In this document: positions 496 to 45,406 of the stretch, in pieces
How positions within the stretch are numbered: the stretch's first letter is position 1
Layout: each line of letters opens with the position of its first letter
Assembly: GCF_902652985.1 (NCBI RefSeq)
Contig: NC_047023.1
Span: 41,540,001 to 41,604,000, forward strand
Origin: Pecten maximus
Taxonomy: Eukaryota
Direction of reading: 5' to 3'
Length of the DNA: 64,000 bases
Position numbers and translations under genes: made by a program
Notes under the pieces: model-generated
The model's database searches: none
Told to the model about the DNA's origin: nothing
What the model saw: only the letters and a program-made list of their open reading frames with translations

Positions 496-3400
496 GTAAG
501 GCCATAAGCTATCATTATAATTAAAACAATGTTCATGCAATACTTGTTGGGTTGAAAGATTGGATAGTTTGGTGCCACAGTGGTAATGTACAATGCATTC
601 ACGGTTTGAGTCCCCGATTAAATTAATAAAGTTATTTTGGATAAACTTTCTGATCTCATGTCATTTTTCCATTCTTTTTCTCCGAGTACTCTGGTGTTCT
701 CCCACAGAAAGATATCTTATCTTCCAACCAAGCCAACAACAGCTTTGCTTGTTTTGCATTTTAACTGTTGTAAGATAAATAACATTTTTTTTGGATTGTT
801 TTGTTACTATATCACAATTTTATTGCTACATGGCCAGTCATGAACACTAGAGGATAATTATAGGAATTTGTCTTTATATTTGTATGTACATAACTCCAAT
901 GATGTCCTCACTGTACTGGCTTCATATCAATCTGATTATCCTGAAGTTTCATACACATGTTCACAACCATCACCTCATCTATATATCAACCATCTGGGGT
1001 CACTACTTTGATATTGATTAATTTGTAAATGATGTAAAGTTACTAAATTGGAAACTAATTTTTGTAACAGAGTGGGAGTCTGGAGCAGCACCCTGGATGT
1101 GAGGAGGCTATATTACAAGAGTTATTGTCCCTGTCTTCCTCGGAGGGACTGTCTCTCCCTCACACCAGTAGACCTCGTGGGACAGATCCAATGGCATCTA
1201 TGGCTTCTCTCAACATTGCCACTGACAACTGTGAAGAAAACATTAGTCAGCAATGGGACCGAATAGCTTTGCACTTACGGAGATATTTCACAGATCGTCT
1301 GACAAAATTGCCAATTGACAGTCAAAAACAGGTGATGGATTTGTATGAAAACAAGCGTATGGAATACATACAGAGTTTGTCCACTCTGTACCCCTCGGAG
1401 GATGTGCTCATCAAGTATCAGACTTTACGGTCCCAGCAGCTGGACCATTGCTTCCATACTCTGCTGCCTGATGCAGACTCTGAAGCATATAATTCTGTAG
1501 CCGTCACGAAAAATTGTCGAGAACTAGCTGATATTATTTTGAAAATGATTGATGAAGATTTTGTTATTTTCAATTCTGGTGTGTTCAAAAAGTCATTTAA
1601 TATCGCGCGAGCAATGCATGACATGTACCTGGAAAAATTTTCAGATGAAATGTCAGCACTTGTTGAAGATATTTGGGAAGAAATTGAAGAAATCATTCGC
1701 AAACAGCCCCCTCAGTCTTCCAGTGAGCATAGTCATTTAGGAAAAGGCAACTCTAAACTTGGGAAGAAAGAAAAGGCTCAAAGTCTCGAGTCTGTATTAT
1801 CAACAAATGTAGCTGATGAGGAAGTGTCAACATTCAGTTTGCCTCGAGATTACATGGAGTCCATCCTCAACGTGGTCACCGCTGTCCTTCACATTGAGGA
1901 ACATGTAGAAAGCTTGCTGAAGTGTGCGGCATGGGACAATGCTGGGATCTCCAGTAAAAAAGTAAAGAGGAAGGGTAGTCTCCGTGGTAAGTCATAACAC
2001 TGATGTCAACTGCTGTAGGCCATTTTTTAAAGCTCTTTCAAGATATTTGTTTTTTTTTCTTAATTATTCTCTACAAGCGTTATAGATGGTCTGTGCTGTT
2101 GTGGTTGTGTCCTTTGGTAAGACACTTTACCTTAATTGCTCTTGATAGCATGCATTAAGCATACTTTATATTGTTCATGGCTCTTGATTTAGAGGTAAAT
2201 CCAGAAAACTTACAAACAACAACAATGCAAGAACTGTTCTTCTTATTGAAATAAGAATATCTTTGACAATATAGAAAGAGTTCCAATGAAAAAAAAAGTT
2301 GGAATATTTGAAAAGGTATCGGATTACAATCACCGAGATAAACATGGTATTTTGATTTTACCTGTTTAGGTGTACTGAAGACGAGCTCCAGTCCTGAGCC
2401 AGTCCGCCGACCTGTCAGCTTTAGCGGCCATGATGATGTCTCCTTCTCCGACAGCTTCTCCTCCTTTGGCTCTTCATTGTCCGCTCTCACAGACAACATG
2501 CCCGCTCCTAAGGGTACGTACATATTACAATCACAGACAACATGTCCGCTCCAAAGGGTACGTACATATTACAGTCACAGACAACATGTCCCCTCCCAAG
2601 GGTAGATACATATTACAGTCACAGACAGCATGTCCACTCCCAAGGGTACGTACATATTACAGTCACAGACAACATGTCCGCTCCCAAGGGTACGTACATA
2701 TTACAGTCACAGACAACATGTCCCTCCCAAGGGTACGTACATATTACAGTCACAGACAACATGTCCCCTCCCAAGGGTACGTACATATTACAGTCACAGA
2801 CAACATGTCCGCTCCCAAGGGTGTACATATTACAGTCACAGACAACATGTCCTCTCCCAAGGGTACGTACATATTACAGTCACAGACAACATGTCCCTCC
2901 CAAGGGTACATACATATTACAGTCACAGACAGCATGTCCCCTCCCAAGGGTAGATACATATTACAGTCACAGACAGCATGTCCACTCCCAAGGGTACGTA
3001 CATATTACAGTCACAGACAACATGTCCACTCCCAAGGGTACATACATATTACAGTCACAGACAACATGTCCCCTCCCAAGGGTATACATAATACAGTCAC
3101 AGACAACATGTCCACTCCCAAGGGTACGTACATATTACAGTCACAGACAGCATGTCCACTCCCAAGGGTACGTACATATTACAGTCACAGACAACATGTC
3201 CGCTCCCAAGGGTACGTACATATTACAGTCACAGACAACATGTCCCCTCCCAAGGGTAGATACATATTACAGTCACAGACAACATGTCCACTCCCAAGGG
3301 TACGTACATATTACAGTCACAGACAGCATGTCCACTCCCAAGGGTACGTACATATTACAGTCACAGACAACATGTCCGCTCCCAAGGGTACGTACATATT

Positions 3401-6400
3401 ACAGTCACAGACAACATGTCCCTCCCAAGGGTACGTACATATTACAGTCACAGACAACATGTCCCCTCCCAAGGGTACGTACATATTACAGTCACAGACA
3501 ACATGTCCCCTCCCAAGGGTACGTACATATTACAGTCACAGACAACATGTCCCCTCCCAAGGGTACGTACATATTACAGTCACAGACAACATGTCCCCTC
3601 CCAAGGGTACGTACATATTACAGTCACAGACAACATGTCCCCTCCCAAGGGTGTACATATTACAGTCACAGACAACATGTCCTCTCCCAAGGGTACGTAC
3701 ATATTACAGTCACAGACAACATGTCCACTCCCAAGGGTGTACATATTACAGTCACAGACAACATGTCCACTCCCAAGGGTAAGGACATATTACAATCACA
3801 GACAACATGTCCGCTCCCAAGGGTACGTACATATTACAGTCACAGACAACATGTCCGCTCCCAAGGGTATACATATTACAGTCACAGACAACATGTCCCC
3901 TCCCAAGGGTACATACATATTACAGTCACAGACAACATGTCCCTCCCAAGGGTACGTACATATTACAGTCACAGACAACATGTCCGCTCCCAAGGGTACG
4001 TACATATTACAGTCACAGACAACATGTCCCCTCCCAAGGGTACGTACATATTACAATCACAGACAACATGTCCACTCCCAAGGGTACGTACATATTACAG
4101 TCACAGACAACACGTCCCCTCCCAAGGGTACATACATATAACAGTCACAGACAACATGTCCCCTCCCAAGGGTACGTTCATATTACAGTCACAGACAACA
4201 TGTCCGCTCCCAAGGGTACGTACATATTACAGTCACAGACAACATGTCCCCTCCCAAGGGTACGTACATATTACAGTCACAGACAACATGTCCCCTCCCA
4301 AGGGTACGTACATATAACAGTCACAGACAACATGTCCCCTCCCAAGGGTACGTACATATTACAGTCACAGACAACATGTCCCCTCCCAAGGGTACGTACA
4401 TATTACAGTTACAGACAACATGTCCACTCCCAAGGGTACGTACATATTACAGTCACAGACAACATGTCCCCTCCCAAGGGTACGTACATATTACAGTCAC
4501 AGACAACATGTCCCTCCCAAGGGTATACATATTACAGTCACAGACAACATGTCCACTCCCAAGGGTGCGTACATATTACAGTCACAGACAACATGTCCCC
4601 TCCCAAGGGTACGTACATATTACAGTCACAGACAACATGTCCCCTCCCAAGGGTACGTACATATTACAGTCACAGACAACATGTCTGCTCCCAAGGGTAT
4701 ACATATTACAGTCACAGACAACATGTCCTCTCCCAAGGGTATACATATTACAGTCACAGACAACATGTCCCCTCCCAAGGGTATACATATTACAGTCACA
4801 GACAACATGTCCCCTCCCAAGGGTACGTACATATTACAGTCACAGACAACATGTCCCCTCCCAAGGGTACGTACATATTACAGTCACAGACAACATGTCC
4901 CCTCCCAAGGGTACATACATATTACAGTCACAGACAACATGTCCCCTCCCAAGGGTACGTACATATTACAGTCACAGACAACATGTCCCCTCCCAAGGGT
5001 ACGTACATATTACAATCACAGACAACATGTCCACTCCCAAGGGTACGTACATATTACAGTCACAGACAACATGTCCACTCCCAAGGGTACATATATATTA
5101 GTCACAGACAACATGTCCCCTCCCAAGGGTACGTACATATTACAGTCACAAACATGTCCACTCCCAAGGGTACGTACATATTACAGTCACAGACAACATG
5201 TCCCCTCCCAAGGGTATACATATTACAGTCACAGACAACATGTCCCCTCCCAAGGGTATACATATTACAGTCACAGACAACATGTCCCCTCCCAAGGGTA
5301 CATATATATTAGTCACAGACAACATGTCCCTCCCAAGGGTACATACATATTACAGTCACAGACAACATGTCCCCTCCCAAGGGTACGTACATATTACAGT
5401 CACAGACAACATGTCCTCTCCCAAGGGTACGTACATATTACAGTCACAGACAACATGTCCCTCCCAAGGGTACGTACATATTACAGTCACAGACAACATG
5501 TCCCCTCCCAAGGGTACGTACATATTACAGTCACAGACAACATGTCCTCTCCCAAGGGTACGTACATATTACAGTCACAGACAACATGTCCCCTCCCAAG
5601 GGTACATACATATTACAATCACAGACAACATGTCCCCTCCCAAGGGTACATACATATTACAGTCACAGACAACATGTCCCCTCCCAAGGGTATACATATT
5701 ACAGTCACAGACAACATGTCCCTCCCAAGGGAACGTACATATTACAGTCACAGACAACATGTCCCTCCCAAGGGTACGTACATATTACAGTCACAGACAA
5801 CATGTCCTCTCCCAAGGGTACGTACATATTACAGTCACAGACAACATGTCCGCTCCCAAGGGTTCGTACATATTACAGTCACAGACAACATGTCCCTCCC
5901 AAGGGTACGTACATATTACAGTCACAGACAACATGTCCCTCCCAAGGGTACGTACATATTACAGTCACAGACAACATGTCCCCTCCCAAGGGTACGTACA
6001 TATAACAGTCACAGACAACATGTCCCCTCCCAAGGGTACGTACATATTACAGTCACAGACAACATGTCCCCTCCCAAGGGTACGTACATATTACAGTTAC
6101 AGACAACATGTCCCCTCCCAAGGGTACGTACATATTACAGTCACAGACAACATGTCCACTCCCAAGGGTATACATATTACAGTCACAGACAACATGTCCC
6201 TCCCAAGGGTACGTACATATTACAGTCACAGACAACATGTCCCTCCCAAGGGTACATACATATTACAGTCACAGACAACATGTCCCTCCCAAGGGTATAC
6301 ATATTACAGTCACAGACAACATGTATATGTCCCCTCCCAAGGGTATACATATTACAGTCACAGACAACATGTCCCCTCCCAAGGGTACGTACATATTACA

Positions 6401-9400
6401 GTCACAGACAACATGTCCGCTCCCAAGGGTGTACATATTACAGTCACAGACAACATGTCCCCTCCCAAGGGTACGTACATATTACAGTCACAGACAACAT
6501 GTCCACTCCCAAGGGTACGTACATATTACAGTCACAGACAACATGTCCCTCCCAAGGGTACATACATATTACAGTCACAGACAACATGTCCCTCCCAAGG
6601 GTATACATATTACAGTCACAGACAACATGTCCCCTCCCAAGGGTATACATATTACAGTCACAGACAACATGTCCCCTCCCAAGGGTACGTACATATTACA
6701 GTCACAGACAACATGTCCGCTCCCAAGGGTGTACATATTACAGTCACAGACAACATGTCCCCTCCCAAGGGTACGTACATATTACAGTCACAGACAACAT
6801 GTCCACTCCCAAGGGTACGTACATATTACAGTCACAGACAACATGTCCCCTCCCAAGGGTACGTACATATTACAATCACAGACAACATGTCCACTCCCAA
6901 GGGTACGTACATATTACAATCACAGACAACATGTCCCCTCCCAAGGGTACGTACATATTACAGTCACAGACAACATGTCCCCTCCCAAGGGTATACATAT
7001 TACAGTCACAGACAACATGTCCACTCCCAAGGGTACGGACATATTACAGTCACAGACAACATGTCCCCTCCCAAGGGTATGTACATATTACAGTCACAGA
7101 CAACATGTCCCCTCCCAAGGGTACGTACATATTACAGTCACAGACAACATGTCCACTCCCAAGGGTACGTACATATTACAGTCACAGACAACATGTCCCC
7201 TCCCAAGGGTACATACATATTACAGTCACAGACAACATGTCCCCTCCCAAGGGTATACATATTACAGTCACAGACAACATGTCCCCTCCCAAGGGTACAT
7301 ACATATTACAGTCACAGACAACATGTCCACTCCCAAGGGTACGTACATATTACAGTCACAGACATGTCCACTCCCAAGGGTACGTACATATTACAGTCAC
7401 AGACAACATGTCCCCTCCCAAGGGTACGTACATATTACAGTCACAGACAACATGTCCCCTCCCAAGGGTACGTACATATTACAGTCACAGACAACATGTC
7501 CCTCCCAAGGGTACGTACATATTACAGTCACAGACAACATGTCCGCTCCCAAGGGTACGCACATATTACAGTCACAGACAACATGTCCACTCCCAAGGGT
7601 ACATACATATTACAGTCACAGACAACATGTCCACTCCCAAGGGTACGGACATATTACAGTCACAGACAACATGTCCCCTCCCAAGGGTATACATATTACA
7701 GTCACAGACAACATGTCCCCTCCCAAGGGTACGTACATATTACAGTCACAGACAACATGTCCCCTCCCAAGGGTACGTACATATTTCAGTCACAGACAAC
7801 ATGTCCCCTCCCAAGGGTACGTACATATTACAGTCACAGACAACATGTCCCCTCCCAAGGGTACGTACATATTACAGTTACAGACAACATGTCCCTCCCA
7901 AGGGTACGTACATATTACAGTCACAGACAACATGTCCTCTCCCAAGGGTACGTACATATAACAGTCACAGACAGCATGTCCCCTCCCAAGGGTACGTACA
8001 TATTACAGACACAGACAACATGTCCCCTCCCAAGGGTACGTACATATTACAGTTACAGACAACATGTCCCCTCCCAAGGGTCTGTACATATTACAGTCAC
8101 AGACAACATGTCCTCTCCCAAGGGTACGTACATATAACAGTCACAGACAGCATGTCTAACTACATGTACATCATGTAAGTGTGCCCTGATGATGACCCGC
8201 CTAAGGCTAACACATGTCAGAAACAAGCTGTACAAGAAGTTATAATTGACTGTTTAGAAATCTGGATTTAGGAGGTGCTTCTCTTCTATTTGTGAAGATC
8301 TCTCTAGCCGAGCGATATATTGCGGCTAGTATTTACCAGGGTTACATGTAATTATATACACATATCACATATTATGTTGCTTTTGGATGAGCCATGACAA
8401 AGGATTTGAAGGCCTTTATTAATATGTTTGGGTCTGTCAAGATTTAAGTCTGAAATGTTACAATTCAAAATTGATTGAACAGCCCCCCCTAGACCTAACA
8501 CCTTTTAACATAAATACATGTACACACACATGTACATCAATTATGTGCTTTATTTCCGACAGTTGTGGAAAAGGCTCGAGCGGAAGAGAGATTGAGATGG
8601 GAATGGAAACTCATGTTTAAAAAGATTTCCAAGGATTTGTCACAGTGTGTTGACAAGCAGATACGTAACCTCCTAAAGACTACATTAGACAAGGAGTTGA
8701 AAGACTGGATAGAACTTCATGTCCTTCAGACAGAGATGGTCAGAGAGGACATCTGGGGAGGAAAACTGGACTATCCCAAGTCTATCACCAAGGTAGGAAG
8801 GAAAACTGGACTAACCCAAATCTGTCACTAAGGTACGGATGGAAAGTGGACAATTCCATATATCTATCACTAAATTAGGTAGGGAAGGTGGACTATCCCA
8901 AATCTATCACTAAGGTAGGTAGGGAAGGTGGACTATCCAAAATATATCACTAAAGTAGGTAGGGAAGGTGGACTATCCCAAATCTATCACTAAGGTAGGT
9001 AGGGAAACTGGACTAACCCAAATCTGTCACTAAGGTACAGATTGAAAGTGGACAATTCCATATCTATCACTAAATTAGGTAGGGAAGATAGACTATCCCA
9101 AATCTATCACTAAGGTAGGTAGGGAAGGTGGACTATCCCAAATCTATCACTAAGGTAGGTAGGGAAGGTGGACTATCCCAAATCTATCACTAAGGTAGGG
9201 AGGGATAATGGACTATCCCAAGTCTATCATTATGGTGGGGAGGGAAGGTTGACTCAAATCTATCACTAAGTTTCTACTGCTCCATACTGACTGATGAAGA
9301 TACCACTTTAGATCAAACCTAACTTTAAGTAATTAATTGTTACTGTATTAGTTCACTCTTATATTGTATAATTTTCTGTTTACTGCTCTGTAGTCGGTGC

Positions 9401-12400
9401 TGGACTTCATGAACGAACTGGATTTTCTGTTGCCCTTCGCCAAGGCCGGATCTGACAGTGTTCTTCACTGTGTGAGGACAGCCTTCGTGGACTCTGCCAA
9501 TCTGTGTTTACAGAACTTCCACGTCCACCTCACAAAGGTATGATCTTCCACTCTATCCACCATGGCCGTCATCTTAGAAATCGTATTACAGCTGCTTCTC
9601 CTTAATGGTTTATTGTATTGAGACAAGACTTACACAAATGAGAATTTTATGTGGTTCACAGATGGTCATATAACTGAAATTTGGACCTGTACCACTTTCA
9701 CGATAGTCACCATCTTGGAAATGTAAATACAATGTTGTATAAAGTTAGGATTTCCACTTCTATCCATAGAAGTTCTTATTAACAGGAATGTTCTCCATAC
9801 AAGATGTCTGGCATGGCAGCTTAAAACCTTATCACTGCTTCTGCTAATCAGAAAGTCGGAATGATTTATAATTCTGCTGATCAGATAGTCTGAATAATTT
9901 ATACTTCTGCTAATCAGATATTCTCAGTGATTTTCTCCTGCTAATTCTCAGTGATTTTCTCCTGCTAATTCTCAGTGATTTTCTACTGCTAATCAGATAT
10001 TCTCAGTGATTTTCTCCTGCTAATTCTCAGTGATTTTCTACTGCTAATCAGATATTCTCAGTGATTTTCTCCTGCTAATTCTCAGTGATTTTCTACTGCT
10101 AATCAGATATTCTCAGTGATTTTCTACTGCTAATCAGAAAGTCTTATGTCCTTTTAAAGAAAGATTTCATAATAACTCTTAACTCATGGTTTATTTTCCT
10201 AGAATAAGAAAAAAATCATCATTGATTAATCATATTGGTTCAGCAAAGTAACCTAGAATGCTGTTGTCTTGAGGATTTCCGACAAGACAAGAATGAAACA
10301 ACCATTAAAGTACAATACATTTATAATGGGTTATGGGTATCACAGAACCATACCGAACTGTTTACACGGACGTTGGATCTCCCACCTCCCGTATATTTAT
10401 AATGGGTTATGGGTATCACAGAACCATACCGAACTGTTTACACGGACCTTGGATCTCCCACCTCCCGTATATTTATAATGGGTTATGGGTAACACAGAAC
10501 CATACCGAACTGTTTACACGGACGTTGGATCTCCCACCTCCCGTATATTTATAATGGGTTATGGGTAACACAGAACCATACCGAACTGTTTACACGGACC
10601 TTGGATCTCCCACCTCCCGTATATTTATAATGGGTTATGGGTAACACAGAACCGTACCGAACTGTTTACACGGACGTTGGATCTCCCACCTCCCGTATAT
10701 TTATAATGGGTTATGGGTAACACAGAACCATACCGAACTGTTTACACGGACCTTGGATCTCCCACCTCCCGTATATTTATAATGGGTTATGGGTAACACA
10801 GAACCATACCGAACTGTTTACACGGACGTTGGATCTCCCACCTCCCGTATATTTATATACATTGATACTGACAGAGCCCAATGAGACAGATTTAAAAATT
10901 AATGTCAACAAAATCTACAGATATTAAAAAATATGATTGTTTGCAGCTAAGTGGTGACATCCCGCGGAATGCTCCCATGAAGAGTTTATATGCGATCCTG
11001 TCCAGTGCTGCCTATATCAGGAATCACTTGTATCACTATGAGTCAGTGCTAAGTCCAGAGGAAAGCAGGTATGTCTTCAGCTTAAACCCTGTCCCCTTAA
11101 TTACAGAGGAATTAATATTGTTGTTTTCTGGGCCAGGCTACACTCTGGCACATTAATCAGATAAATGGCCATTGAAGTGTAGGTACACTGAAGTGTTAAC
11201 TGTATGAGATGGTAGGGCTAGCCAATGTGGCTGCTCGGTGTAGATTGGAAAAAATGTGCTGTGTATTTATATAGAGATTAAGAATTTGTGTATGTTTACA
11301 GTAAAAAGGTGTTCACAGTGCTGTATTAATATAGAGATTAAGAATTTGTGTATGTTGATGTTTACAGTAAAAAGGTGTTCACAGTGCTGTATTAATATAG
11401 AGATTAAGAATTTGTGTATGTTGACAGTAAGAAGGTGTTCACCGTGCTGTACAAACAGTACGAGGAGCTAGTGGAGGCTCTGAGTAAACTCACCACCGAA
11501 ATCCACAATAACTTCATGGCTACTAGTATCCTACACGACACGGAGAGCAACAACTGGGCCGACACCAAAGAGTTCTTTGAGGTTAGAAACAGATTTAATC
11601 TTCGCCACAAAATATAACATGACATGGCATATTGTTGTGAAAATCCAACATAAAGTGCTAATTTCTTCATTACTTTAAATCATAAAATGTTTGTTGTTAT
11701 TGCATTTTTAGCTCACCTGGACCGAAGGTCCGGTGAGCTTATGCCATGGCGCAGCGTCCGTCGTCCGTCCGTCCGTCGTCCGTCGTCTGTCGTCCGTCCG
11801 TCCGTCCGTCCGTCCGTCAACATTTGCTTCAAATCGCTACTAGTCATAAAGTTCTTATTGGATTTTTACCAAATTTGGCCAGAAACATCCTTGGCAGAAT
11901 GGGAAAAGATTTTGCATAAATGGTGACTCTGACCCCTGAGGGGCCAAAGGGGCGGGGCCCAATAGGGGAAATAGAGGTAATTCCTTTAAATCGCTACTAG
12001 TCATAAAGTTATGAATGGATTTGAACCCAATTTGGTCAGAAACATCCTTGGGGGAAGGGGAACAGATTTTGCATAAATGGTGATTCTGACCCCCGAGGGG
12101 CCAAAGGGGCGGGGCCAAATATGGGAAATAGAGGTAATTCCTATAAATCTCTACTAGTTATAAAGTTATGAATGGATTTGAACCCAATTTATTCAGAAAC
12201 ATCCTTGGGGGAAGGGGAACAGATTTTGCATAAATGGTGATTCTGACCCCCGAGGGGCCAAAGGGGTGGGGCCAAATATGGGAAATAGAGGTAATTCCTC
12301 TAAATCTCTACTTGTCATAAAGTTATGAATGGATTTGAACCCAATTTGGTCAGAAACATCCTTGGGGGAAGGGGAAAAGATTTTGCATAAATGGTGGCTC

Positions 12401-31851: not shown

Positions 31852-32070
31852 CTCAGGCGGCACAGTTGTACACATTTCACCAAGGAGATGAGGGTTCAGT
31901 TCCCTGATAGGACATGAAAAGGTATGGTGGTCACTTCGCTGACCGTGTGGATTTTCTCTGAGTGCTTGGGTTTCCTCCCACAATAACACCCTTTGCACGC
32001 TTCCTTTAGGGCCAACTTGAGTGATTAATATGAGTTGTTATCACTTGTTTCGTAGCTGCTGTAAAAGCTA
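31852..32070 (+). mobile_element. Degenerate tRNA-derived SINE with V-domain-like core
   Basis: B-box-like GGGTTCAGTTCCC followed by GGATTTTCTCTGAGTGCTTGGGTTTCCTCCCACA, resembling the V-SINE core GGTTTTCTCCGGGTACTCCGGTTTCCTCCCAC. Confidence 0.6.
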
Positions 32071-32277
32071 GTTCACTGACCTCATACTTCTCTCCTGTCA
32101 GTCCCTGGATATGTTCCATATCCTTTCACTGCTAATCTAAGCCGCCTGCATTCCTATATTTTGTCAACAACATGTTCACATATTTGAGTTGGCTAGTTAG
32201 GCCTGTTTGGTGTCTCGTTACATCCAATGACAGTCAGATTGGAATAAAAAAGCATGACTTGATATGATCCACAATAG

Positions 32278-32330
32278 TTTGTTTGTTTAGGTTTTACGAC
32301 CCATCGACAGCTATGGTCATTTAGGGCCAA
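32278..32330 (-). mobile_element. SINE 3'-tail fragment
   Basis: (TTTG)n + TTTTACGACCCATCGACAGCTATGGTCATTTAGGG resembles the reverse-complemented tail of molluscan SINEs; a related copy lies at ~41755. Confidence 0.45.
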
Positions 32331-33411: not shown

Positions 33412-33532
33412 ATGGCTACCGACGGTTTACGAGTTGATAATCCACAAGATACCATAGAAGCGCTCAGTCGGGAGGCGGAGATGCTGAAGAAAAGACTTGA
33501 AGATGAAAAACAAAAACTAAAAGACATCGACA
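33412..33532 (+). CDS. GNB5: GNB5 exon 1 (MATDGL...KLKDID)
   Basis: Coiled-coil N-terminus; A|gtatga donor. Confidence 0.9.
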
Positions 33533-36500: not shown

Positions 36501-39500
36501 GTAAGACTGACAAACGACGTATAGTGAGCTCCTCACAGGTAAGACTGACAAACGTCTTATAGTGAGCTCCTCACAGATAAGACTGACAAACGTTGTATAG
36601 TGAGCTCCTCACAGGTAAGACTGACCAATGTCATATAGTGAGCACACAGGTGAGACTGACAAACATCGTATAGTGAGTTCCTCACAGGTAAGACTGACAA
36701 ACATCATATACTGAGCTCACAGATGAGACTGACAAACATTGTAGTGAGCTCCTCACAGGTAAGACTGACAAATGTCGTATAGTGAGCCCCTCACAGGTAA
36801 GACTGACCAATGTTGTATAGTAAGCTCCTCACAGGTAAGACTGACAAATGTTGTATAGTGAGCCCCTCACAGGTAAGACTGACAAAAAACGTTATATAGT
36901 GAGCTCCTCACAGGTAAGACTGACAAACGTCGTATAGTGAGCTCCTCACATGTAAGCCTGACAAACGTTGTATAGTGAGCTCCTCACAGGTAAGACTGAC
37001 CAATGTCATATAGTGAGCTCACAGGTAAGACTGACCAATGTCATATAGTGAGCTCACAGATAAGACTGACAGATGTTTAATAGTGAGCTCCTCACAGATA
37101 AGACTGACAAATGTTGTATAGTGAGCCCCTCACAGGTAAGACTGACAAAAAACGTTATATAGTGAGCTCACAGGTAAGACTGACCAATGTCATATAGTGA
37201 GCTCACAGATAAGACTGACAGATGTTTTATAGTGAGCTCCTCACAGATAAGACTGACAAACGTTGTATAGTGAGCTCCTCACAGGTAAGACTGACCAATG
37301 TCATATAGTGAGCACACAGGTGAGACTGACAAACATCGTATAGTGAGTTCCTCACAGGTAAGACTGACAAACATCATATACTGAGCTCACAGATGAGACT
37401 GACAAACATTGTAGTGAGCTCCTCACAGGTAAGACTGACAAATGTTGTATAGTGAGCCCCTCACAGGTAAGACTGACCAATGTTGTATAGTGAGCTCCTC
37501 ACAGGTAAGACTGACCAATGTTGTATAGTGGGCTCCTCACAGGTAAGACTGACCAATGTTGTATAGTAAGCTCCTCACAGGTAAGACTGACCAATGTTGT
37601 ATAGTAGGCTCCTCACAGGTAAGACTGACAAATGTTGTATAGTGAGCTCCTCACAGGTAAGACTGACCAATGTTGTATAGTGAGCCCCTCACAGGTAAGA
37701 CTGACCAATGTTGTATAGTAAGCTCCTCACAGGTAAGACTGACAAACATTGTATAGTGAGCTCCTGACAGGTAATAAGACTGACAAACGTTGTATAGTGA
37801 GCTCCTCACAGGTAAGACTGACAAACGACGTATAGTGAGCTCCTCACAGGTAAGACTGACAAACGTCTTATAGTGAGCTCCTCACAGATAAGACTGACAA
37901 ACGTTGTATAGTGAGCTCCTCACAGGTAAGACTGACCAATGTCATATAGTGAGCACACAGGTGAGACTGACAAACATCGTATAGTGAGTTCCTCACAGGT
38001 AAGACTGACAAACATCATATACTGAGCTCACAGATGAGACTGACAAACATTGTAGTGAGCTCCTCACAGGTAAGACTGACAAATGTCGTATAGTGAGCCC
38101 CTCACAGGTAAGACTGACCAATGTTGTATAGTGAGCTCCTCACAGGTAAGACTGACCAATGTTGTATAGTGGGCTCCTCACAGGTAAGACTGACCAATGT
38201 TGTATAGTAAGCTCCTCACAGGTAAGACTGACCAATGTTGTATAGTGGGCTCCTCACAGGTAAGACTGACAAATGTTGTATAGTGAGCTCCTCACAGGTA
38301 AGACTGACCAATGTTGTATAGTGAGCCCCTCACAGGTAAGACTGACCAATGTTGTATAGTAAGCTCCTCACAGGTAAGACTGACAAACATTGTATAGTGA
38401 GCTCCTGACAGGTAATAAGACTGACAAACGTTGTATAGTGAGCTCCTCACAGGTAAGACTGACAAACGTCGTATAGTGAGCTCCTCACAGATAAGACTGA
38501 CAAATGTTGTATAGTGAGCTCCTCACAGGTAAGACTGACAAATGTTGTATAGTGAGCTCCTCACAGGTAAGACTGACAAACGTCGTATAGTGAGATCCTC
38601 ACAGGTAAGACTGACAAACGTCGTATAGTGAGCTCCTCACAGATAAGACTGACAAATGTTGTATAGTGAGCTCCTCACAGGTAAGACTGACAAACGTTGT
38701 ATAGTGAGCTCCTCACAGGTAAGACTGACAAATGTTGTATAGTGAGCTCCTCACAGGTAAGACTGACAAATGTTGTATAGTGAGCTCCTCACAGGTAAGA
38801 CTGACAAACGTCGTATAGTGAGCTCCTCACAGGTAAGACTGACCAATGTTGTATAGTAAGCCCCTCACAGGTAAGACTGACAAACATCGTATAGTGAGTT
38901 CCTCACAGGTAAGACTGACAAATGTCATATAGTGAGCACACAGGTGAGACTGACCAATGTTGTATAGTGAGCTCCTCACAGATAAGACTGACCAATGTTG
39001 TATAGTGGGCTCCTCACAGATAAGACTGACCAATGTTGTATAGTAAGCTCCTCACAGGTAAGACTGACAAACATCGTATAGTGATTTCCTCACAGGTAAG
39101 ACTGACCAATGTCGTATTGTGATAGTCGGAAGGACTTCCAATTGATAGGCGTTTGTTCATAGTCACAAGGAATTATAAATATTGATTGCAAACTTGACAC
39201 AATAATGAAATACTGTAATGTATTGAACAAACCCAAAGTATTGTTAGAAAAGAAATATCAAGAGCCTAAAGAATTTTGTCTCAATTGTATTGCTTCAGCC
39301 ATGGCCACATTGACAAACATGTAACATAAATGATGTAGTCTTTACACTGTAATAATATATTTCCATGTTGATCTTATTTTAAAATTGGAAGCCTTCAGCT
39401 AAATCATGATTGTGCTAATGGACATTTCTGTTTATTGTATTCTGTGACAAGCACTGTGGGTTTGCTGATTTGTCATTGTGCTAATCTGATTAAAGTCAAT

Positions 39501-42500
39501 AATGTGCTGAAATTTAAGTGTGCAAAGCTGAATACTTTTACAATATTTTGTTTATCCTGACACTCATGGTTCAACCTTAACAAGTTTTCTGTGTTACTAC
39601 ATTCTTCACAAAAAAAATCCTTCCATTTCAGGATGGTAAAATGCTGGTATGGGATGCCTTCACAACAAATAAGGTAAGATATTTAGAAAAGCAGACAAGG
39701 TTTCTGATAATTTTCTAGCATTACTGAACCACCTTACACCCAGTCATGGACAAACACTGGCTTTGAAAATCTTGCTTGTATTGACAACTTTATGGCCCAT
39801 TTCATTTGTTGTTATTTTGACATGTTTTCTTATCATTCTGTGATAAATTGAGAAACCATAATAATCCCTAATTAAGATAAAAGTTTGATTATTTGTACAG
39901 GAGCATGCAGTAACTATGCCTACTACCTGGGTGATGGCGTGTTCCTTTGGTCCATCAGGAGAGGTTGTAGCATGTGGGTAGGTACACAATTCTTATCACT
40001 TTCTTTGTTTGCCTCAGCTGTTAAGTTTATTATTGTCAAATGCTTCATTTAAAATCAAAACAAAAACAAAAACCTTTCTCTGTTTTCAAAACAATTTCTT
40101 TGAAAAAAAAGCTGTTTATGTAAATGTGGCAGTATTATGTTATGACAAATGTAGAGGTTACACAGTGAGAGAAGATATTCTACAGTTAATGCCTCTCATT
40201 GGGTCTAGACAACAAGAGTTTATTTTACTCAGTAAGAGAAGATGAAGTAAGATAACACATTCTTCTCATCATCATATTTTAGGGGTCTAGACAACAAGAG
40301 TTTATTTTACTCAGTAAGAGAAGATGAAGTAAGATAACACATTCCTCTCATCACTATATTTTAGGGGTCTAGACAACAAGTGTACAGTTTACCCGGTGAG
40401 AGAAGATGACCCCGCGTCTAAGAAGAAGGCTGTGGCTACACACACAAGTTATCTCTCTTGTTGTACATTTACAACCTCAGACAAACAGGTACGATTTCAC
40501 AGATACATAAATGTCTTGTAACAGAGGGACTAACATATCACCTTAACTTAAAGTAGGACGTGGGGATATTGCTTAAAATGGGATATTTCTAAGATCTGAA
40601 TTTGATAAATATCTTCATGTGGTGTTTAAAATTAGATATTTATGCTGTGTTGTGAAACAAATCATGTTTCGGCATATGATTTATTTAGGATTCAAAACCA
40701 AAAACTGAAATAAAGGAAATTTTCTTCTGCATATCACTATAGATACCTGTTATAGATTGACAATAACACAGGCATTCTTGGTATGTGGGCTCTTTCTAGA
40801 ACTAAGATTTTCTAAGGTTTTTATTTATAAATTAATAGTGGCCTTTTATTTCTAATAATGCAGGCCCCATGAACCTCTTTATAACTGAAATGGCTGGTGT
40901 ATGTTACCCACATTTGAACCTCTTACCAAGAATTAATAAAACAGAATTTTCAGTGCTCACATTAATTTTATACCCAGCTTTCTTATTTTTTGCAGATTTT
41001 AACAGGAAGTGGTGACAGTACATGTGCATTGTGGGATGTCGAGAGTGGCCAGCTGATTCAGAGTTTCCATGGTCACGCTGGAGACGTCATGAGTATTGAC
41101 CTTTCTCCCTCGGAAACTGGCAATCTATTTATATCTGGGGTAAGTATGAAATGAACATGTGTGTAAATATTCATTCTTCCTGATAAGTTGTTTTCCTGCA
41201 TGACTATTAGAATAGATCATTAACAGAAAGAAAACAAAGAGATTAAACATCAAAGATTTCTTAGTGCTATTCTAAAATTATCTGTGTGGAAGGAGTGGAT
41301 AATTTTGAAACAGCCCTACTCAAATCTTGTTTCTGTATGTGAAATTCAGTTTGAATGGAATAAGATTATATAATAGAAAATGTTTTGTTTGAAATGTATG
41401 TTTTATCCAGTCCAGTACAGTAATATGTAGTGAATAAATTTTTTTTCAAATTATGTTCTCGTACTTTAAAAAACTGGACATATTTTGATTACTCAGTTGT
41501 TTCAACTGATTTCAGTCTAAACCTATTTGAATTTTGAAAAGTTTACAAAAAAGTTTGAAATACTGGTGCATTTCTTGGTTGGACAGAATTCATCCATCAC
41601 TCTCCTGTGACAGAGGCTGCCATTTCTAATTTTATGTCGTGATAGATTACTAAAACAGATACATAATTATGTCACAAACAGCTTCAGTGTCCTCCTGGCT
41701 TGAATTTGAAAATTTTCTAGATGGTCCACCCTCCTGACTATTTTGTTGTAGCCTAGTTTAGTATTGTTTAATGTCCTATCAACAGCTAAGGTTATTTAAG
41801 GTTGACTTGTGTTTGAGTTTCATGTGTATACTTGGAGACTGCAACATGTTCATGTTTTTCCTCCTTGTAATGGTGCAGAACTAATGCCAACTTTAAAATG
41901 CTATCTATTTTGTTGTTGTCTCTAATGAGGTACCATTTTGTTGTAGCCTATTCTCTAATGAGGTACCATTTTGCTGTAGTCTAGCCTCTAATGAGGTACC
42001 ATTTTGTTGTAGTCTAGCCTCTAATGAGGTACCATTTTGTTGTAGCCTAGCCTCTAATGAGGTACCATTTTGTTGTAGCCTCTAATGAGGTGCCATTTTG
42101 TTGTAGCCTAGCCTCTAATGAGGTACCATTTTGTTGTAGCCTATTCTCTAATGAGGTACCATTTTGTTGTAGTCTAGCCTCTAATGAGGTACCATTTTGT
42201 TGTAGTCTAGCCTCTAATGAGGTACCATTTTGTTGTAGCCTCTAATGAGGTGCCATTTTGTTGTAGCCTAGCCTCTAATGAGGTACCATTTTGTTGTAGC
42301 CTATTCTCTAATGAGGTACCGTTTTGTTGTAGTCTAGCCTCTAATGAGGTACCATTTTGTTGTAGTCTAGACTCTAATGAGGTACCATTTTGTTGTAGTC
42401 TAGCCTCTAATGAGGTATCATTTTGTTGTAGCCTCTAATGAGGTACCATTTTGTTGTAGTCTAGCCTCTAATGAGGTGCCATTTTGTTGTAGCCTCTAAT

Positions 42501-45406
42501 GAGGTACCATTTTGTTGTAATCTAGCCTCTAATGAGGTATCATTTTGTTGTAGCCTAGCCTCTAATGAGGTACCATTTTGTTGTAGTCTAGCATCTAATG
42601 AGGTACCATTTTGTTGTAGTCTAGCCTCTAATGAGGTACCATTTTGTTGTAGCCTAACCTCTAATGAGGTACCATTTTGTTGTAGTCTAGCCTCTAATGA
42701 GGTATCATTTTGTTGTAGCCTAACCTCTAATGAGGTACCATTTTGTTGTAGTCTAGCATCTAATGAGGTACCATTTTGTTGTAGTCTAGCCTCTAATGAG
42801 GTAACATTTTGTTGTAGCCTAGCCTCTAATGAGGTACCATTTTGTTGTAGCCTAACCTCTAATGAGGTGCCATTTTGTTGTTTCCCCAGGGCTGTGATAA
42901 GGCGGCTATGGTGTGGGACATGAGATCAGGAGAATGCGTACAGATGTTTGAAGGACATGACTCGGATATAAACAGTGTTAGATTTTACCCAAGCGGTGAT
43001 GCATTTGCAACAGGATCAGACGATGCTACAGTGAGTGATTTCTTATTATGTCAGATTCATTGCTGATTGTCTCATGATCAATTGTATGTTATTATATATA
43101 TATATATATAGCAATAAGACATGGCTGATGATAAGCTCTCCCATATGTGTGGCATTTGGAGTACAGTGAAAACTGCCAGCATATGTTATTTCATTGTCTT
43201 GTAATTCACTCTGTAATTTTGTGTTGTCTCCCCTTGTTTATTACCTGGCTTGGTCCAAAGGACCAGGTGATCTTATGTCATATTGTGGTGTCTGTCGTCT
43301 GTCGGCCGTTTGTGGCCTGTCATCTGTTGTCAGTCCCTTTCACAACAATTTATTCAAATGACTTCTTCTAAACTAATGATTGGAATTTAATTTAATTTAA
43401 TTGACTAGAAGCATCCCCAGGTGGAGGGGATTCAGACCTGTACAAATGGTGGGACTGACCCCCTAAATTATATAATGGATATCACTGCTGAGGGGCCAGG
43501 ATAAATGGGGGAAATTTGGTCTTGAGCGATTATTGAGCAAATAAGATTCATGTAATGTTGTAGAAATGGAGTGTGTAGCTCCCCTGGGGGCGGTGGACCC
43601 AATTGGAGAAACAAAAGTTTAAACTTTTAAATCGCTACTAGCCCTGAATGACTGTATGGTTTTCCATAGAATTTGGTCTGGAGTATTATTGGACACTGTT
43701 GTATAAATAAGGAGCGTGACTTCATCGAGTTCGGGGAGAGGAGCTAGGCGCAATAGGGAAAGAGAGCTTAAGTCTTTAAAATCATTCTTCTTCTATAAGA
43801 ATGTCAGGTTTGGTCCACATTTGGTGTGAACCATTTGTTGGGAGAGGCAGCTCAAAATGACGAAAAATATTTGTAATATAATACACTTTGGGACTGAGTC
43901 AATGTGTCTGATATGACAGTGTGTCAGTTTAGACAGTGTTTGCAATGACATTGAGGTATGTAGCTATTTCGATAGATATGGTCATATGATACAGGAAGTT
44001 GTTGAAGTAAGTGGTTGGTAAAGTCAGGTTTCACTGTATCTTGTTTTCCAGTTCGTTTAAGATCAATAGAGCTTACATTTTATGAAGTACATGTATATTC
44101 TCCATTCAAACCCATCTTGATTTAGTGTCAAGTTAGGTACAAAGTAGGAGTTCTGTGTCAATTAACCCTGTATAATCAAAAAGTGTTCTGTGTTGTTAAA
44201 TGGATTGGTTAAACATGTACCGAGTTTGACTGAGGGAGGCTTGAATATATCAACAAACTGATTAAAATTAGTTTATAAAAAAATGTGTTTCCATAAAATT
44301 TACAAATGGGTACATTGGTTCCAACGAAATTTGTTGTTAGACAAGTTACAAACTTGTCAGTTTGAAGTTCAAATTGGGGAATATTTATTTGACTTTTCAG
44401 TGTCGTCTGTTTGACCTGCGAGCTGACCGAGAGGTGAACTGTTATAAGAAAGATAGTCTAATTAATGGCTGTAACTCTGTGGACTTTTCCATTAGTGGTA
44501 TGTATCAGGTCAACATTACAAAGGGCTTGTAACCCTTTAATGAGGTACATTGGAAAAATGTTTTGATATTCAATTATACCAGGACCTTAATTTAGAGGTG
44601 CTACACCGTGGACAGAGTATAAATGCATGACACCCACAATATTGAAATACATCTGTATATCTAGTTAACACCAACAAATGAAAGAAAATGTCCTAAGACT
44701 GATAGTTTATAAGACCGAAAGTTATGTACCAAATATAGGTATAGAGTATGTCGGAATTCCTTCAGGATGTAGTTAATTATTTCTCCAGTTTATATTCTAA
44801 AGATAAAAGAGAAGCTCAAAGTTCTTGAGAGTGGTAATAGATAATAGCATTTTGTTTTCAGTTGATCTAGCAGAATCCCCCAACAAAAAATACCTGAAGA
44901 TATTTTTATTATAAATCAATACTGAAATTCATATTTGTCATGGAATGCAGACGTAAAAACATTCATGTGAAATATAAATTTTCTTACAGGTCGACTTCTA
45001 TTTGGTGGATACAACGATTACACAGTGAATATCTGGGATGTATTAAAGGGAAATCGAGTGACCATATTGTATGCACATGAAAACAGAGTCAGTTGTCTTG
45101 GTGTCTCACCAGATGGCACTGCTCTATGTACTGGAAGCTGGGATTACTCATTAAAGGTATGAAAGAAGGAATGTCGGATTAAGATTTTATTTAATAAATA
45201 TAAAAGAGAAACATGGTGATAAGCATAAAAATATTTCCATGTATCTGTCATTAATTCATATTGATTACAAATAAACATTACTTCATGGTTATTCTTTTGG
45301 AATGGAAATTACGATAGCATAACTTTTCCAGTCATTTGTTGTTTAAAGTAGCATACACCCTTAAGTCATTTGTTGTTTCTTGGCTTTATTTCAGATTTGG
45401 GCATAG
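33412..45406 (+). CDS. GNB5: Guanine nucleotide-binding protein subunit beta-5 (WD40), complete, 10 coding exons, ~355 aa
   Basis: Exons 33412-33532 (alternative in-frame ATG at 33406), 34998-35140, 39632-39673, 39901-39977, 40365-40488, 40996-41139, 42890-43030, 44401-44497, 44990-45156, 45395-45406; 1068 nt, all GT-AG and in frame. MATDGL start, [35 protein letters not shown] and IWA* end match Gbeta5 rather than Gbeta1-4. Confidence 0.96.
33981..34290. mobile_element. MITE / non-autonomous DNA transposon, ~80-bp TIRs (TAGCCC...GGGCTA), 9-bp TSD GTTGACAAC
   Basis: TAGCCCAAGTTTTCTCTGGTCCTGTCACCATGTCTGGTGTAGGGCC... is the reverse complement of the right end; TSD at 33972-33980 and 34291-34299. 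TAG..CTA ends with a 9-bp TSD suggest AcademH- or Mutator-like origin (tentative). Confidence 0.9.
34998..35140 (+). CDS. GNB5: GNB5 exon 2 (...[25 protein letters not shown])
   Basis: ttttcag acceptor, CAG|gtaaga donor. Confidence 0.95.
35108..39121 (+). repeat. 38-bp tandem array (~105 copies) spanning the GNB5 exon 2 donor
   Basis: Unit ACTGACAAACGTCGTATAGTGAGCTCCTCACAG|GTAAG with 35-41-bp variants. Confidence 0.97.
39632..39673 (+). CDS. GNB5: GNB5 exon 3 ([14 protein letters not shown])
   Basis: atttcag acceptor, AAG|gtaaga donor. Confidence 0.95.
39901..39977 (+). CDS. GNB5: GNB5 exon 4 ([14 protein letters not shown]...VAC)
   Basis: tgtacag acceptor, GG|gtaggt donor. Confidence 0.95.
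40201..40410 (+). repeat. 82-bp duplication spanning the GNB5 exon 5 acceptor
   Basis: GGGTCTAGACAACAAG at 40201, 40283 and 40365 (real exon start). Confidence 0.92.
40365..40488 (+). CDS. GNB5: GNB5 exon 5 ([10 protein letters not shown]...TTSDKQ)
   Basis: attttag acceptor, CAG|gtacga donor. Confidence 0.95.
40996..41139 (+). CDS. GNB5: GNB5 exon 6 ([14 protein letters not shown]...LFISG)
   Basis: tttgcag acceptor, GGG|gtaagt donor. Confidence 0.96.
41755..41903 (-). mobile_element. Degenerate SINE fragment
   Basis: TGTTTAATGTCCTATCAACAGCTAAGGTTATTTAAGG is similar to the tail at 32278. Confidence 0.4.
41907..42881 (+). repeat. 33/28-bp tandem array (~30 copies) abutting the GNB5 exon 7 acceptor
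   Basis: CCTCTAATGAGGTACCATTTTGTTGTAG(T/C)CTAG; last copy runs directly into TTTCCCCAG|exon. Confidence 0.95.
42890..43030 (+). CDS. GNB5: GNB5 exon 7 ([10 protein letters not shown]...GSDDAT)
   Basis: ttccccag acceptor, ACA|gtgagt donor. Confidence 0.96.
43238..43860 (+). mobile_element. Old degenerate HINE-like element related to 11705-13779
   Basis: TGGTCCAAAGGACCAGGTGATCTTATG hairpin, (GTCT/GTC) microsatellite remnant, diverged units with AAATCGCTACTAG and ACAAATGGTGGGACTGACCCC. Confidence 0.7.
44401..44497 (+). CDS. GNB5: GNB5 exon 8 ([12 protein letters not shown]...DFSIS)
   Basis: ttttcag acceptor, G|gtatgt donor. Confidence 0.96.
44990..45156 (+). CDS. GNB5: GNB5 exon 9 ([10 protein letters not shown]...GSWDYSLK)
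   Basis: cttacag acceptor, AAG|gtatga donor. Confidence 0.96.
45395..45406 (+). CDS. GNB5: GNB5 exon 10 coding part (IWA*)
   Basis: tttcag|ATT TGG GCA TAG. Confidence 0.93.
   Translation: MWA

What the first reader, a model, noticed from the sequence alone, without database searches (positions are those of the whole stretch)
2370..42889. Recurrent tandem amplification of the genes' own splice junctions (splice-site-seeded satellites)
Seen: two unrelated genes with 29 complete introns carry at least 9 independent arrays whose unit is a local splice signal. Donor side: 44 bp (2487), 40 bp (8760), compound (16102), 61 bp (19578), 32 bp (23459) and 38 bp (35108). Acceptor or branch-point side: 60/66 bp (11256), 82 bp (40201) and 33 bp (41907). 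A tenth starts 9 nt after a donor (22003). The units are unrelated to each other, so this is not one dispersed satellite family; each arose in place. Polarity is invariant: the functional site is the exon-side terminal copy and the array grows into the intron. The three largest arrays between 1 and 45 kb are all of this type, although junctions are a very small fraction of the DNA. Inference: either a mutational process is targeted to exon-intron boundaries (R-loop or spliceosome-coupled breaks, microhomology-mediated circles with rolling-circle reinsertion), or such arrays are retained for a splicing role. Selection against exon disruption explains the polarity but not obviously the frequency. 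I do not know of a description of this as a systematic phenomenon, but I cannot check the literature.
Basis: partly seen in the sequence, partly recalled or inferred. Interest (0 to 1): 0.9.

Follow-up and report, generated by a model that had tools for sequence, protein, structure and literature searches.

The report
Splice-junction minisatellites in scallop introns
Eight intron repeat arrays in two scallop genes are tandem copies of the gene's own exon edge plus splice signal; this repeat type is already known from amphioxus and human genes, but here splice-donor copies are about ten times more common genome-wide than chance predicts.

Summary
All ten arrays are at the stated places. Six repeat an exon end plus its 5' splice site into the intron. 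Two repeat a 3' splice site plus exon start. Two lie beside a junction without spanning it.

Protein homology, reading-frame checks and RNA contigs show that the exon-side end copy is the site used. Four arrays tested occur nowhere else in the genome, so they arose in place.

The kind is known. Amphioxus has "mirage" minisatellites, and human F7, CBS, IFI6, LMNB2 and PDGFA have minisatellites that span an exon-intron border. This scan reported the same thing on three other pieces of this genome.

New here:
- Periodic consensus donors outnumber seven same-composition control words 3- to 100-fold, and a second donor word beats its own reversed control 9-fold.
- About 5% of consensus donor words head an array.
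- An acceptor-like word shows no excess.
- Inner donor copies are no better conserved than the rest of the unit, so I see no sign of a splicing role.
- About 30% of a random 200 kb is minisatellite.

The cause of the donor excess is unresolved.

The parts
325..28657 (+). Gene 1, KIAA0825-like (DUF4495); it starts before or near the window start. Exons located include 325-495, 1077-1986, 2370-2513, 8563-8792, 9394-9537, 10947-11068, 11428-11581, 13936-14129, 14575-14759, 14953-15092, 15444-15599, 15867-16120, 19464-19628, 21834-21993, 22707-22810, about 23384-23483, 27650-27853 and 28472-28657.
   Evidence: Pfam DUF4495 hit on 11453-11578. Full-length homologues P0002, P0003 and P0006 were found with exon 1 and laid on the window by tblastn. 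RNA contigs give the joints 8792/9394, 9537/10947 and 11068/11428.
33406..45159 (+). Gene 2, G-protein beta-5 orthologue.
   Evidence: The exons hit Pfam WD40_Gbeta with profile positions that continue from exon to exon: 34-75, 74-95, 115-156, 156-203, 202-253, 249-283, 281-338. The last exon matches solved beta-5 chains better (E 1e-36) than single-stretch beta-1 chains (about 1e-30); one longer beta-1 construct scores higher through two matched stretches.
2487..8156 (+). 44-bp x130 donor-junction array. The unit is the last 27 nt of the exon plus GTACGT and 11 more intron nt. The used donor is 2513|2514 in copy 1.
   Evidence: The reading frame fits only copy 1 once the RNA-defined acceptor at 8563 is taken; copy 2 is out of frame. 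The array is found only at this locus. It holds 87 donor-like sites of 7 bits or more.
8759..9270 (+). 40-bp x13 donor-junction array. The unit is 34 nt of exon plus GTAGGA. The used donor is 8792|8793 in copy 1.
   Evidence: RNA contigs of two independent data sets join 8792 to 9394. The homology alignment ends at 8792-8798. Contigs of DNA run X4 cross both array edges.
11262..11451 (+). 60/66-bp x3 acceptor-junction array. The unit is about 40 nt of intron end with ...ACAG plus 20 nt of exon start. The used acceptor is 11427|11428 in the last copy.
   Evidence: RNA contigs join 11068 to 11428. Homology alignments start at 11423-11429.
16102..17410 (+). Compound donor-junction array. The last 19 nt of the exon plus GTATGT... 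recur in 35/92/162-bp units. The used donor is 16120|16121. The array is interleaved with a roughly 490-bp copy of 15466-15957 at 16191-16673.
   Evidence: The homology alignment ends at 16121.
19578..21227 (+). 61-bp x27 donor-junction array, 99% alike. The unit is 51 nt of exon plus GTAAGTCAGC. The used donor is 19628|19629 in copy 1.
   Evidence: Homology alignments end at 19628-19631. The array is found only at this locus. It holds 27 donor-like sites.
22003..22638 (+). 41-bp x16 intron array that starts at +10 after the donor 21993|21994. It does not span the junction and is only weakly like the exon end.
23459..27111 (+). 32-bp x114 donor-junction array. The unit is 25 nt of exon plus GTAAGTC. 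The used donor is 23483|23484 in copy 1.
   Evidence: The 100-nt exon fits the 34-residue gap between the homology alignments. The array is found only at this locus. It holds 92 donor-like sites.
35108..39122 (+). 38-bp x107 donor-junction array in the beta-5 gene. The unit is 33 nt of exon (coding ...[11 protein letters not shown]) plus GTAAG. The used donor is 35140|35141 in copy 1.
   Evidence: The Pfam profile runs to position 75 at 35140 and goes on at 74 in the next exon. The array holds 83 donor-like sites.
40201..40409 (+). 82-bp x2.5 acceptor-junction array. The unit is about 30 nt of intron end with ...TTTTAG plus about 50 nt of exon start. The used acceptor is 40364|40365 in the last copy; the upstream copies have decayed.
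   Evidence: The Pfam profile resumes at position 115 about 40363.
41920..42881 (+). 33-bp x30 array that ends 8 nt before the acceptor 42889|42890. The unit carries CTAAT and a pyrimidine run followed by TAG. It holds no exon sequence, so it is near-junction rather than junction-spanning.
   Evidence: The Pfam profile resumes at position 202 about 42887.

Best explanation
These are junction-spanning ('mirage'-type) minisatellites.

Shown:
- A short stretch that straddled an exon-intron border was duplicated in tandem at its own locus and then expanded into the intron, up to about 130 copies.
- The stretch was either an exon end plus 5' splice site or a 3' splice site plus exon start.
- The spliceosome keeps using the copy that adjoins the exon.
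- All other copies, with up to about 90 donor look-alikes per intron, lie inside the intron and are removed with it.
- None of the donor-array periods (44, 40, 61, 32, 38) is a multiple of three, so use of a later copy would shift the frame.

Inferred, by analogy with other minisatellites:
- The duplication arose by replication slippage or a similar template switch.
- The expansion went by unequal exchange.

Shown for the genome:
- It is unusually rich in minisatellites: about 30% of a random 200 kb.
- Consensus donor words are reiterated about ten times more often than matched control words, and an acceptor-like word is not.

Inferred cause of the asymmetry:
- Part of it is probably a filter. 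Extra donors downstream of the real one are tolerated, because the first one wins. Extra acceptors upstream of the real one would be picked first and would harm the gene.
- A filter alone cannot raise donors above neutral intron sequence. Some further bias at 5' splice sites, in birth or in persistence, is likely but not identified.
For: - Arrays and units.
- Exon borders: tblastn of homologues P0002, P0003 and P0006, Pfam profile continuity in the beta-5 gene, and a frame check.
- RNA contigs from two independent data sets join 8792|9394 and 11068|11428. These are copy 1 of the donor array and the last copy of the acceptor array.
- Local origin: the 32-, 61-, 44- and 53-bp arrays match only their own locus in 918 Mb. 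The 157-bp array, in contrast, belongs to a dispersed family.
- Genome-wide count of three CAGGTAAGT spaced 20-50 nt apart: 5019 matches. Seven control words of the same composition give 286, 49, 533, 92, 194, 812 and 1589.
- AAGGTAAGT gives 1367 against 148 for its reversed control.
- 22% of all CAGGTAAGT occurrences lie in such triples, against 4.3% for the reversed word.
- In the first 5 Mb of contig 1, 3 of 60 distinct CAGGTAAGT sites head an array.
- Ten unrelated donor arrays lie in the first 8.6 Mb of contig 1. One follows a Cupin_8/JmjC exon (E 5.5e-13), one follows a 57-codon open frame, and three follow short open stretches preceded by an acceptor-like pyrimidine-AG.
- Literature for the kind: PMC1557585, PMC3087553, PMC3902484.
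Against: - In an unbiased 200-kb sample, only 2 of 76 arrays carry a strong donor (11 bits or more), against 0.47 expected. At 10 bits the reversed-unit control is as high as the real count. Junction arrays are therefore a small minority of all arrays, and that test lacks power.
- Control word counts vary 30-fold, because dispersed satellite families inflate some of them. The size of the excess is rough.
- Four or five of the ten genome-wide donor arrays have no evident exon upstream. Neither does the 53-bp array at 57916. Some donor-bearing arrays may not sit at real junctions.
- All runs laid were assembled contigs, which drop rare isoforms. Minor use of decoy donors is not excluded.
- The interiors of the large arrays were not checked in raw long reads.
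Confidence: 0.85

Rival explanations
1. A mutational process aimed at 5' splice sites seeds the arrays. Candidates are polymerase pausing, R-loops or transcription-replication conflict near the donor, followed by template switching. The excess would then reflect a higher birth rate rather than tolerance. This adds to the best explanation rather than excluding it.
For: - Donor words are reiterated about 10 times more often than matched words, per occurrence as well.
- The acceptor-like word is not.
- 6 of 25 located donors in the window carry arrays, against 2 of about 25 acceptors.
- A tolerance filter alone cannot lift donors above neutral intron sequence (inference).
Against: - There is no direct evidence of any such process.
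- Array starts show no fixed geometry. The exon part of the unit ranges from 4 to 51 nt and the intron part from 5 to 40 nt.
- No consistent microhomology is seen at array ends.
- The acceptor word is a poor proxy for real acceptors, so the asymmetry is uncertain.
Confidence: 0.3
2. The arrays are kept by selection because many donor copies serve splicing or transcription, for example as U1 snRNP landing sites that protect long introns or strengthen the first donor.
For: - The arrays are large and hold many intact strong donors: 27 to 92 per intron.
- Donors with arrays tend to score higher than those without, but not significantly (medians about 10 and 7.5 bits, P = 0.11).
Against: - Inner donor positions vary as much as the rest of the unit. 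The mean ratio is 1.0 over 13 arrays.
- In three of the six window arrays the donor is the more variable part, with G-1 and G+1 lost in 25% and 14% of the 32-bp copies.
- Published cases found no effect on splicing (PMC3087553, PMC3902484).
Confidence: 0.07
3. The donor word itself, as DNA, is prone to minisatellite formation whether or not it is a splice site. Many donor-bearing arrays would then not derive from junctions.
For: - Four or five of ten genome-wide donor arrays, and the 53-bp array at 57916, have no evident exon upstream.
- The transposed word CAGGATAGT and its reverse are the highest controls, at 812 and 1589.
Against: - In the window, all six donor arrays sit on real, homology- or RNA-supported exon ends and include 19-51 nt of exon.
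- The high decoy counts come from two dispersed satellite families, not from many unrelated arrays.
- Untranslated exons cannot be recognised by open frames, so 'no exon seen' is weak evidence.
Confidence: 0.1
4. The arrays are assembly artefacts: falsely expanded or misplaced repeats.
For: - Short-read contigs collapse the array interiors.
- I could not lay raw long reads.
Against: - A DNA run from a different sample has contigs across exon-to-array and array-to-intron edges of the 40-bp array, and over the flanks of the 60-bp array.
- Copies differ by many substitutions and show higher-order structure.
- Hundreds of like arrays occur genome-wide.
- The same kind was confirmed by resequencing in amphioxus (PMC3902484).
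Confidence: 0.02
5. The introns themselves were created by tandem duplication of an exon stretch holding AGGT (the Rogers model of intron gain). The arrays would then be the remains of intron birth.
For: The amphioxus globin paper proposes this as a possible outcome of such arrays (PMC3087553).
Against: - Each array fills only the exon-side part of its intron and is followed or preceded by unique intron sequence and a separate real splice partner.
- Exon borders coincide with breaks in alignments to distant homologues.
- I did not test intron-position conservation across phyla.
Confidence: 0.04

Closest known systems
Amphioxus 'mirage' minisatellites (Adh3, globin genes BflGb6 and BflGb9, troponin C, PGBD5)
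   Same: - Tandem repeats whose units span an exon-intron border, at either the 5' or the 3' border.
- Units of 10-160 bp that are specific to the locus.
- Copies carry AG/GT signals, yet normal splicing is kept.
- The border copy is left out of homogenisation.
- The mechanism is unknown.
Sources: PMC3087553, PMC3902484.
   Different: - Those cases are in a cephalochordate, were found gene by gene, and have a few to some tens of copies.
- Here the host is a bivalve mollusc and arrays reach 130 copies and 5.7 kb.
- A quarter of the donors in two neighbouring genes are affected.
- A genome-wide, donor-specific excess was measured.
- I found no paper that reports such arrays in molluscs or counts them genome-wide.
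Human minisatellites whose first monomer spans an exon-intron border (F7 intron 7, 37 bp; CBS intron 13, 31 bp; IFI6 '6-16'; LMNB2, 100 bp; PDGFA, 81 bp)
   Same: - The real donor is followed by identical pseudo-donors.
- As a rule only the most upstream site is used, which for F7 is explained by oriented scanning.
Source: PMC1557585.
   Different: - These are isolated human loci with 5-26 copies.
- In IFI6 and CBS the next one or two pseudo-sites are also used.
- In F7 the unit is mostly intron (4 nt of exon and 33 nt of intron). The large window arrays are mostly exon sequence.
Intron gain by internal tandem duplication of an AGGT-bearing exon stretch (the Rogers model, as discussed in PMC3087553 and PMC2812944)
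   Same: Tandem duplication reiterates splice signals, and splicing removes the extra copies.
   Different: In that model the duplication creates a new intron. Here the arrays swell introns that already have their own unique sequence and splice partner.

Membership tests
Junction-spanning ('mirage') minisatellite | Head-to-tail array of a unit in the minisatellite size range (about 10-160 bp) | tested here: met
   Periods are 32-92 bp, with 2.5-130 copies that are 82-99% alike.
Junction-spanning ('mirage') minisatellite | The end unit spans a real exon-intron border, so it holds both exon and intron sequence | tested here: met
   Met for eight arrays, by homology alignments, Pfam profile continuity, RNA joints and a frame check. 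Not met for the 33-bp array at 41920 or the 41-bp array at 22003, which lie 8-9 nt away from the junction.
Junction-spanning ('mirage') minisatellite | The splice signal is reiterated in the inner copies | tested here: met
   The 44-, 40-, 61-, 32- and 38-bp arrays hold 87, 15, 27, 92 and 83 donor-like sites of 7 bits or more. The copies of the 60- and 82-bp arrays carry acceptor-like ...ACAG or ...TTTTAG.
Junction-spanning ('mirage') minisatellite | Normal splicing is kept and the exon-adjoining copy is the one used | tested here: met
   RNA contigs show it directly for the 40-bp and 60-bp arrays. For the other arrays it follows from alignment ends or profile continuity (61-bp, compound, 38-bp) or from frame, exon size or approximate profile position (44-, 32-, 82-bp). 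Contigs cannot exclude minor use of other copies.
Junction-spanning ('mirage') minisatellite | The unit is derived from the locus itself, not from a dispersed repeat family | tested here: met
   The 32-, 61- and 44-bp arrays match only their own place in the 918-Mb genome. The other junction arrays were not searched, but their units contain the local exon sequence.
Junction-spanning ('mirage') minisatellite | Copy number is unstable or polymorphic between alleles | not tested
   Only collapsed short-read contigs were on hand. No second haplotype or long reads were available.

The most novel reading that the evidence does not exclude
In this scallop genome, 5' splice sites are preferred birthplaces of minisatellites, and 3' splice sites are not. 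About one consensus donor in twenty is reiterated in a periodic array, roughly ten times the rate of matched words. This would reflect a mutational process coupled to transcription or splicing, not mere tolerance. With perhaps thousands of independent cases, the genome would be a natural system for finding out how minisatellites are born and how decoy donors are ignored.
Probability: 0.3. Interest if true: 0.7.

Novelty: new member of a known kind. Interest (0 to 1): 0.42.

Why it matters
Each such intron carries tens of perfect decoy donors, yet the gene is spliced at the first one. These are natural experiments on 5' splice-site choice, like the human F7 case but far more numerous.

The arrays also swell old introns by kilobases. 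They are a practical hazard for gene prediction and read mapping in bivalve genomes.

If the donor-specific excess holds against a proper annotation, it points to a link between splicing or transcription and the birth of minisatellites. The papers on 'mirages' say the mechanism is unclear, and this genome offers enough cases to study it.

Tried and rejected
1. I thought the units had a fixed geometry, mostly exon plus only 5-10 nt of intron, as in the 32-, 38-, 40- and 61-bp arrays. I dropped this. In ten donor arrays elsewhere the exon part is 4-36 nt and the intron part 7-40 nt.
2. I tested whether GC-rich, exon-like seeds expand better. Array units are richer in GC than non-array DNA (42% against 35%). 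Within arrays, however, GC correlates with neither length nor copy number (rho 0.02).
3. I looked for selection on inner donors. None was seen.
4. I scored donors in all arrays of a random 200 kb. The test lacks power: 2 of 76 arrays at 11 bits against 0.47 expected, and no excess at 10 bits.
5. The acceptor-side word test showed no excess. The word is a weak proxy for real acceptors.
6. Pfam on open frames upstream of eight donor arrays elsewhere recognised only one, a Cupin_8 domain.
7. Donors with arrays are not significantly stronger than donors without (P = 0.11).
8. The 41-bp array shares only a 13-nt stretch with the exon end, so I did not count it as junction-derived.
9. Exon candidates were joined only inside a script, to check the reading frame.
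Full report
**What is there**

The window has no N. Arrays with a period of at least 12 and at least 3 copies cover 47% of the window.

**The two genes**

Gene 1 (325 to about 28657, + strand):
- One exon hits Pfam DUF4495.
- Exon 1 finds full-length homologues of 1279-1414 residues.
- Laid on the window by tblastn, these mark some 17 exons.

Gene 2 (33406-45159, + strand) is a G-protein beta-5 orthologue:
- Its exons hit the WD40_Gbeta profile in continuous order.
- The last exon matches solved beta-5 chains at E 1e-36 and single-stretch beta-1 chains at about 1e-30; one longer beta-1 construct scores higher through two matched stretches.

Earlier notes of this scan name that species.

**Mapping arrays to junctions**

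Six arrays start inside an exon and repeat its end plus the GT.

| Array | Used donor | Exon nt + intron nt per unit |
|---|---|---|
| 44 bp | 2513\|2514 | 27 + 17 |
| 40 bp | 8792\|8793 | 34 + 6 |
| compound | 16120\|16121 | 19 nt of exon in the unit |
| 61 bp | 19628\|19629 | 51 + 10 |
| 32 bp | 23483\|23484 | 25 + 7 |
| 38 bp | 35140\|35141 | 33 + 5 |

Evidence for these borders:
- Homology alignments end at 8792-8798, 16121 and 19628-19631.
- The beta-5 profile runs to position 75 at 35140 and goes on at 74 in the next exon.
- The 100-nt exon ending at 23483 fills a 34-residue gap between alignments.
- For the 44-bp array, only copy 1 keeps the reading frame once the RNA-defined acceptor at 8563 is taken.

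Two arrays end inside an exon and repeat the AG plus the exon start:
- 60/66 bp, used acceptor 11427|11428.
- 82 bp, used acceptor 40364|40365.

Two arrays only lie beside a junction:
- The 33-bp array stops 8 nt short of the acceptor at 42890 and holds no exon sequence.
- The 41-bp array begins at +10 of its intron and shares only a 13-nt stretch with the exon.

**RNA and independent DNA**

I laid contigs of four public runs on 8200-11800.
- Two independent RNA-like data sets (X6, and X7, which equals X8) join 8792 to 9394, 9537 to 10947 and 11068 to 11428, all with GT..AG.
- So the first copy of the donor array and the last copy of the acceptor array are the ones used.
- A DNA run from another sample (X4) has contigs across both edges of the 40-bp array and over the flanks of the 60-bp array.
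- All these runs are assembled contigs. Minor isoforms and array interiors cannot be judged.

**Local origin**

Two or three units of the 32-, 61-, 44- and 53-bp arrays match only their own locus in the whole genome. By contrast, the 157-bp array at 11827 has a sister array on another chromosome.

**Is it systematic?**

I counted, in the whole 918-Mb assembly, places where a 9-mer recurs three times at spacings of 20-50 nt.

| Word | Role | Matches |
|---|---|---|
| CAGGTAAGT | consensus donor | 5019 |
| TGAATGGAC | same-composition control (reversed donor) | 286 |
| GATGCAGTA | same-composition control | 49 |
| ATGACGTAG | same-composition control | 533 |
| AGTCGATAG | same-composition control | 92 |
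| GATAGCTGA | same-composition control | 194 |
| CAGGATAGT | same-composition control | 812 |
| TGATAGGAC | same-composition control | 1589 |
| AAGGTAAGT | second donor word | 1367 |
| TGAATGGAA | reversed second donor | 148 |

- The two highest controls come from dispersed satellite families.
- By distinct arrays, ten unrelated donor arrays lie in the first 8.6 Mb of contig 1. Two control words give 16 and about 21 arrays in the whole genome.
- Per occurrence, CAGGTAAGT occurs 22,640 times and its reverse 6,606 times. So 22% against 4.3% lie in such triples.
- In the first 5 Mb of contig 1, 3 of 60 distinct sites head an array.
- The acceptor-like word TTTTNCAGG gives 1176 against 1166 for its reverse, so no excess. 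That word marks real acceptors poorly.
- Of the ten donor arrays fetched, one follows a Cupin_8/JmjC exon, one follows a 57-codon open frame, three follow short open stretches preceded by an acceptor-like pyrimidine-AG, and four or five show no evident exon.

**Background**

In 200 kb taken at fixed places on four chromosomes, 30% of the DNA lies in 76 arrays. Only two of these carry a strong donor, against 0.47 expected. Junction arrays are thus a small share of a very large minisatellite load. A published scallop genome reports tandem repeats as its largest repeat class, at 21.7% (PMC10225492).

In the window, 6 of the 16 arrays in 1-45 kb span a donor. My rough estimate for uniform seeding is 6%, giving P of about 2e-4. 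This is post hoc.

**Tests of mechanism**

- Inner donor positions vary as much as the rest of the unit. The mean ratio is 1.0 over 13 arrays, and the donor is the more variable part in three of the six window arrays. There is no sign that the decoys are kept or purged.
- The geometry of the units is not fixed.
- GC does not predict array size.
- Donors with arrays are not significantly stronger than donors without.
- None of the donor-array periods is a multiple of three, but five of five is not significant.
- A filter can explain the asymmetry between donors and acceptors: downstream extra donors are harmless, and upstream extra acceptors are harmful. It cannot explain the excess over neutral words. 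That part stays open.

**What is known**

- Minisatellites whose first monomer spans an exon-intron border are described for human F7, CBS, IFI6, LMNB2 and PDGFA. As a rule the most upstream donor is used (PMC1557585).
- In amphioxus such arrays, at 5' and 3' borders alike, are called 'mirages'. They do not disturb splicing, and their mechanism is called unclear (PMC3087553; PMC3902484).
- I found no paper on molluscs and no genome-wide count.
- This scan has already reported the same kind on three other pieces of this genome. Those notes gave me the word 'mirage', which I then checked in the papers.

**Verdict**

This is a real feature of a known kind. The claim that it is undescribed is wrong. 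The suspicion of a systematic excess is borne out for donors only. The cause of that excess is the one open and interesting point.

Noticed in passing
window 57916-64000, and on to about 1.1 kb past the window end: A 53-bp array of more than 115 copies has AAG|GTGAGC in every unit. It starts exactly at a GT, and its left flank is an AT-rich 29-bp repeat with no evident exon. It occurs only at this locus. It may be a donor-bearing array that is not at a coding junction.
   Followed up: partly
window 49647-50062: A 43-bp x10 array has a unit that carries GGG|GTAAGA on the minus strand. I did not work out the gene context downstream of the beta-5 gene.
   Followed up: no
window 11755-13574; L001:4632-5501: A 157-bp x11 array, preceded by a (CGTC)n run, is the same family as a 156-bp array on contig 1. 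It is very deep in RNA and DNA contigs. It is a dispersed, probably transposon-borne satellite, unlike the junction arrays.
   Followed up: partly
window 15466-15957 and 16191-16673: About 490 bp, covering part of an exon, the intron and the start of the next exon, is copied into the following intron at 94% identity. This leaves a pseudo-exon copy among the compound donor array.
   Followed up: partly
L011-L030 (20 x 10 kb at fixed places on contigs 1-4): 30% of this random sample lies in minisatellite arrays. The median period is 36 bp and the median copy number 11. Units are richer in GC (42%) than the remaining DNA (35%).
   Followed up: yes
L002, L004, L005, L010 (contig 1): Donor arrays elsewhere sit in dense clusters of unrelated arrays. 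Several neighbouring arrays also carry donor-like words, on the same or the opposite strand.
   Followed up: no
window 8200-8441 and 10257-10861: Contig depth is very high in all runs. These stretches, which include the 76-bp x7 array, belong to repeats that are common elsewhere in the genome.
   Followed up: no
runs X7 and X8: Both runs give identical contigs and depths. They look like one data set filed twice, so I counted them as one.
   Followed up: yes
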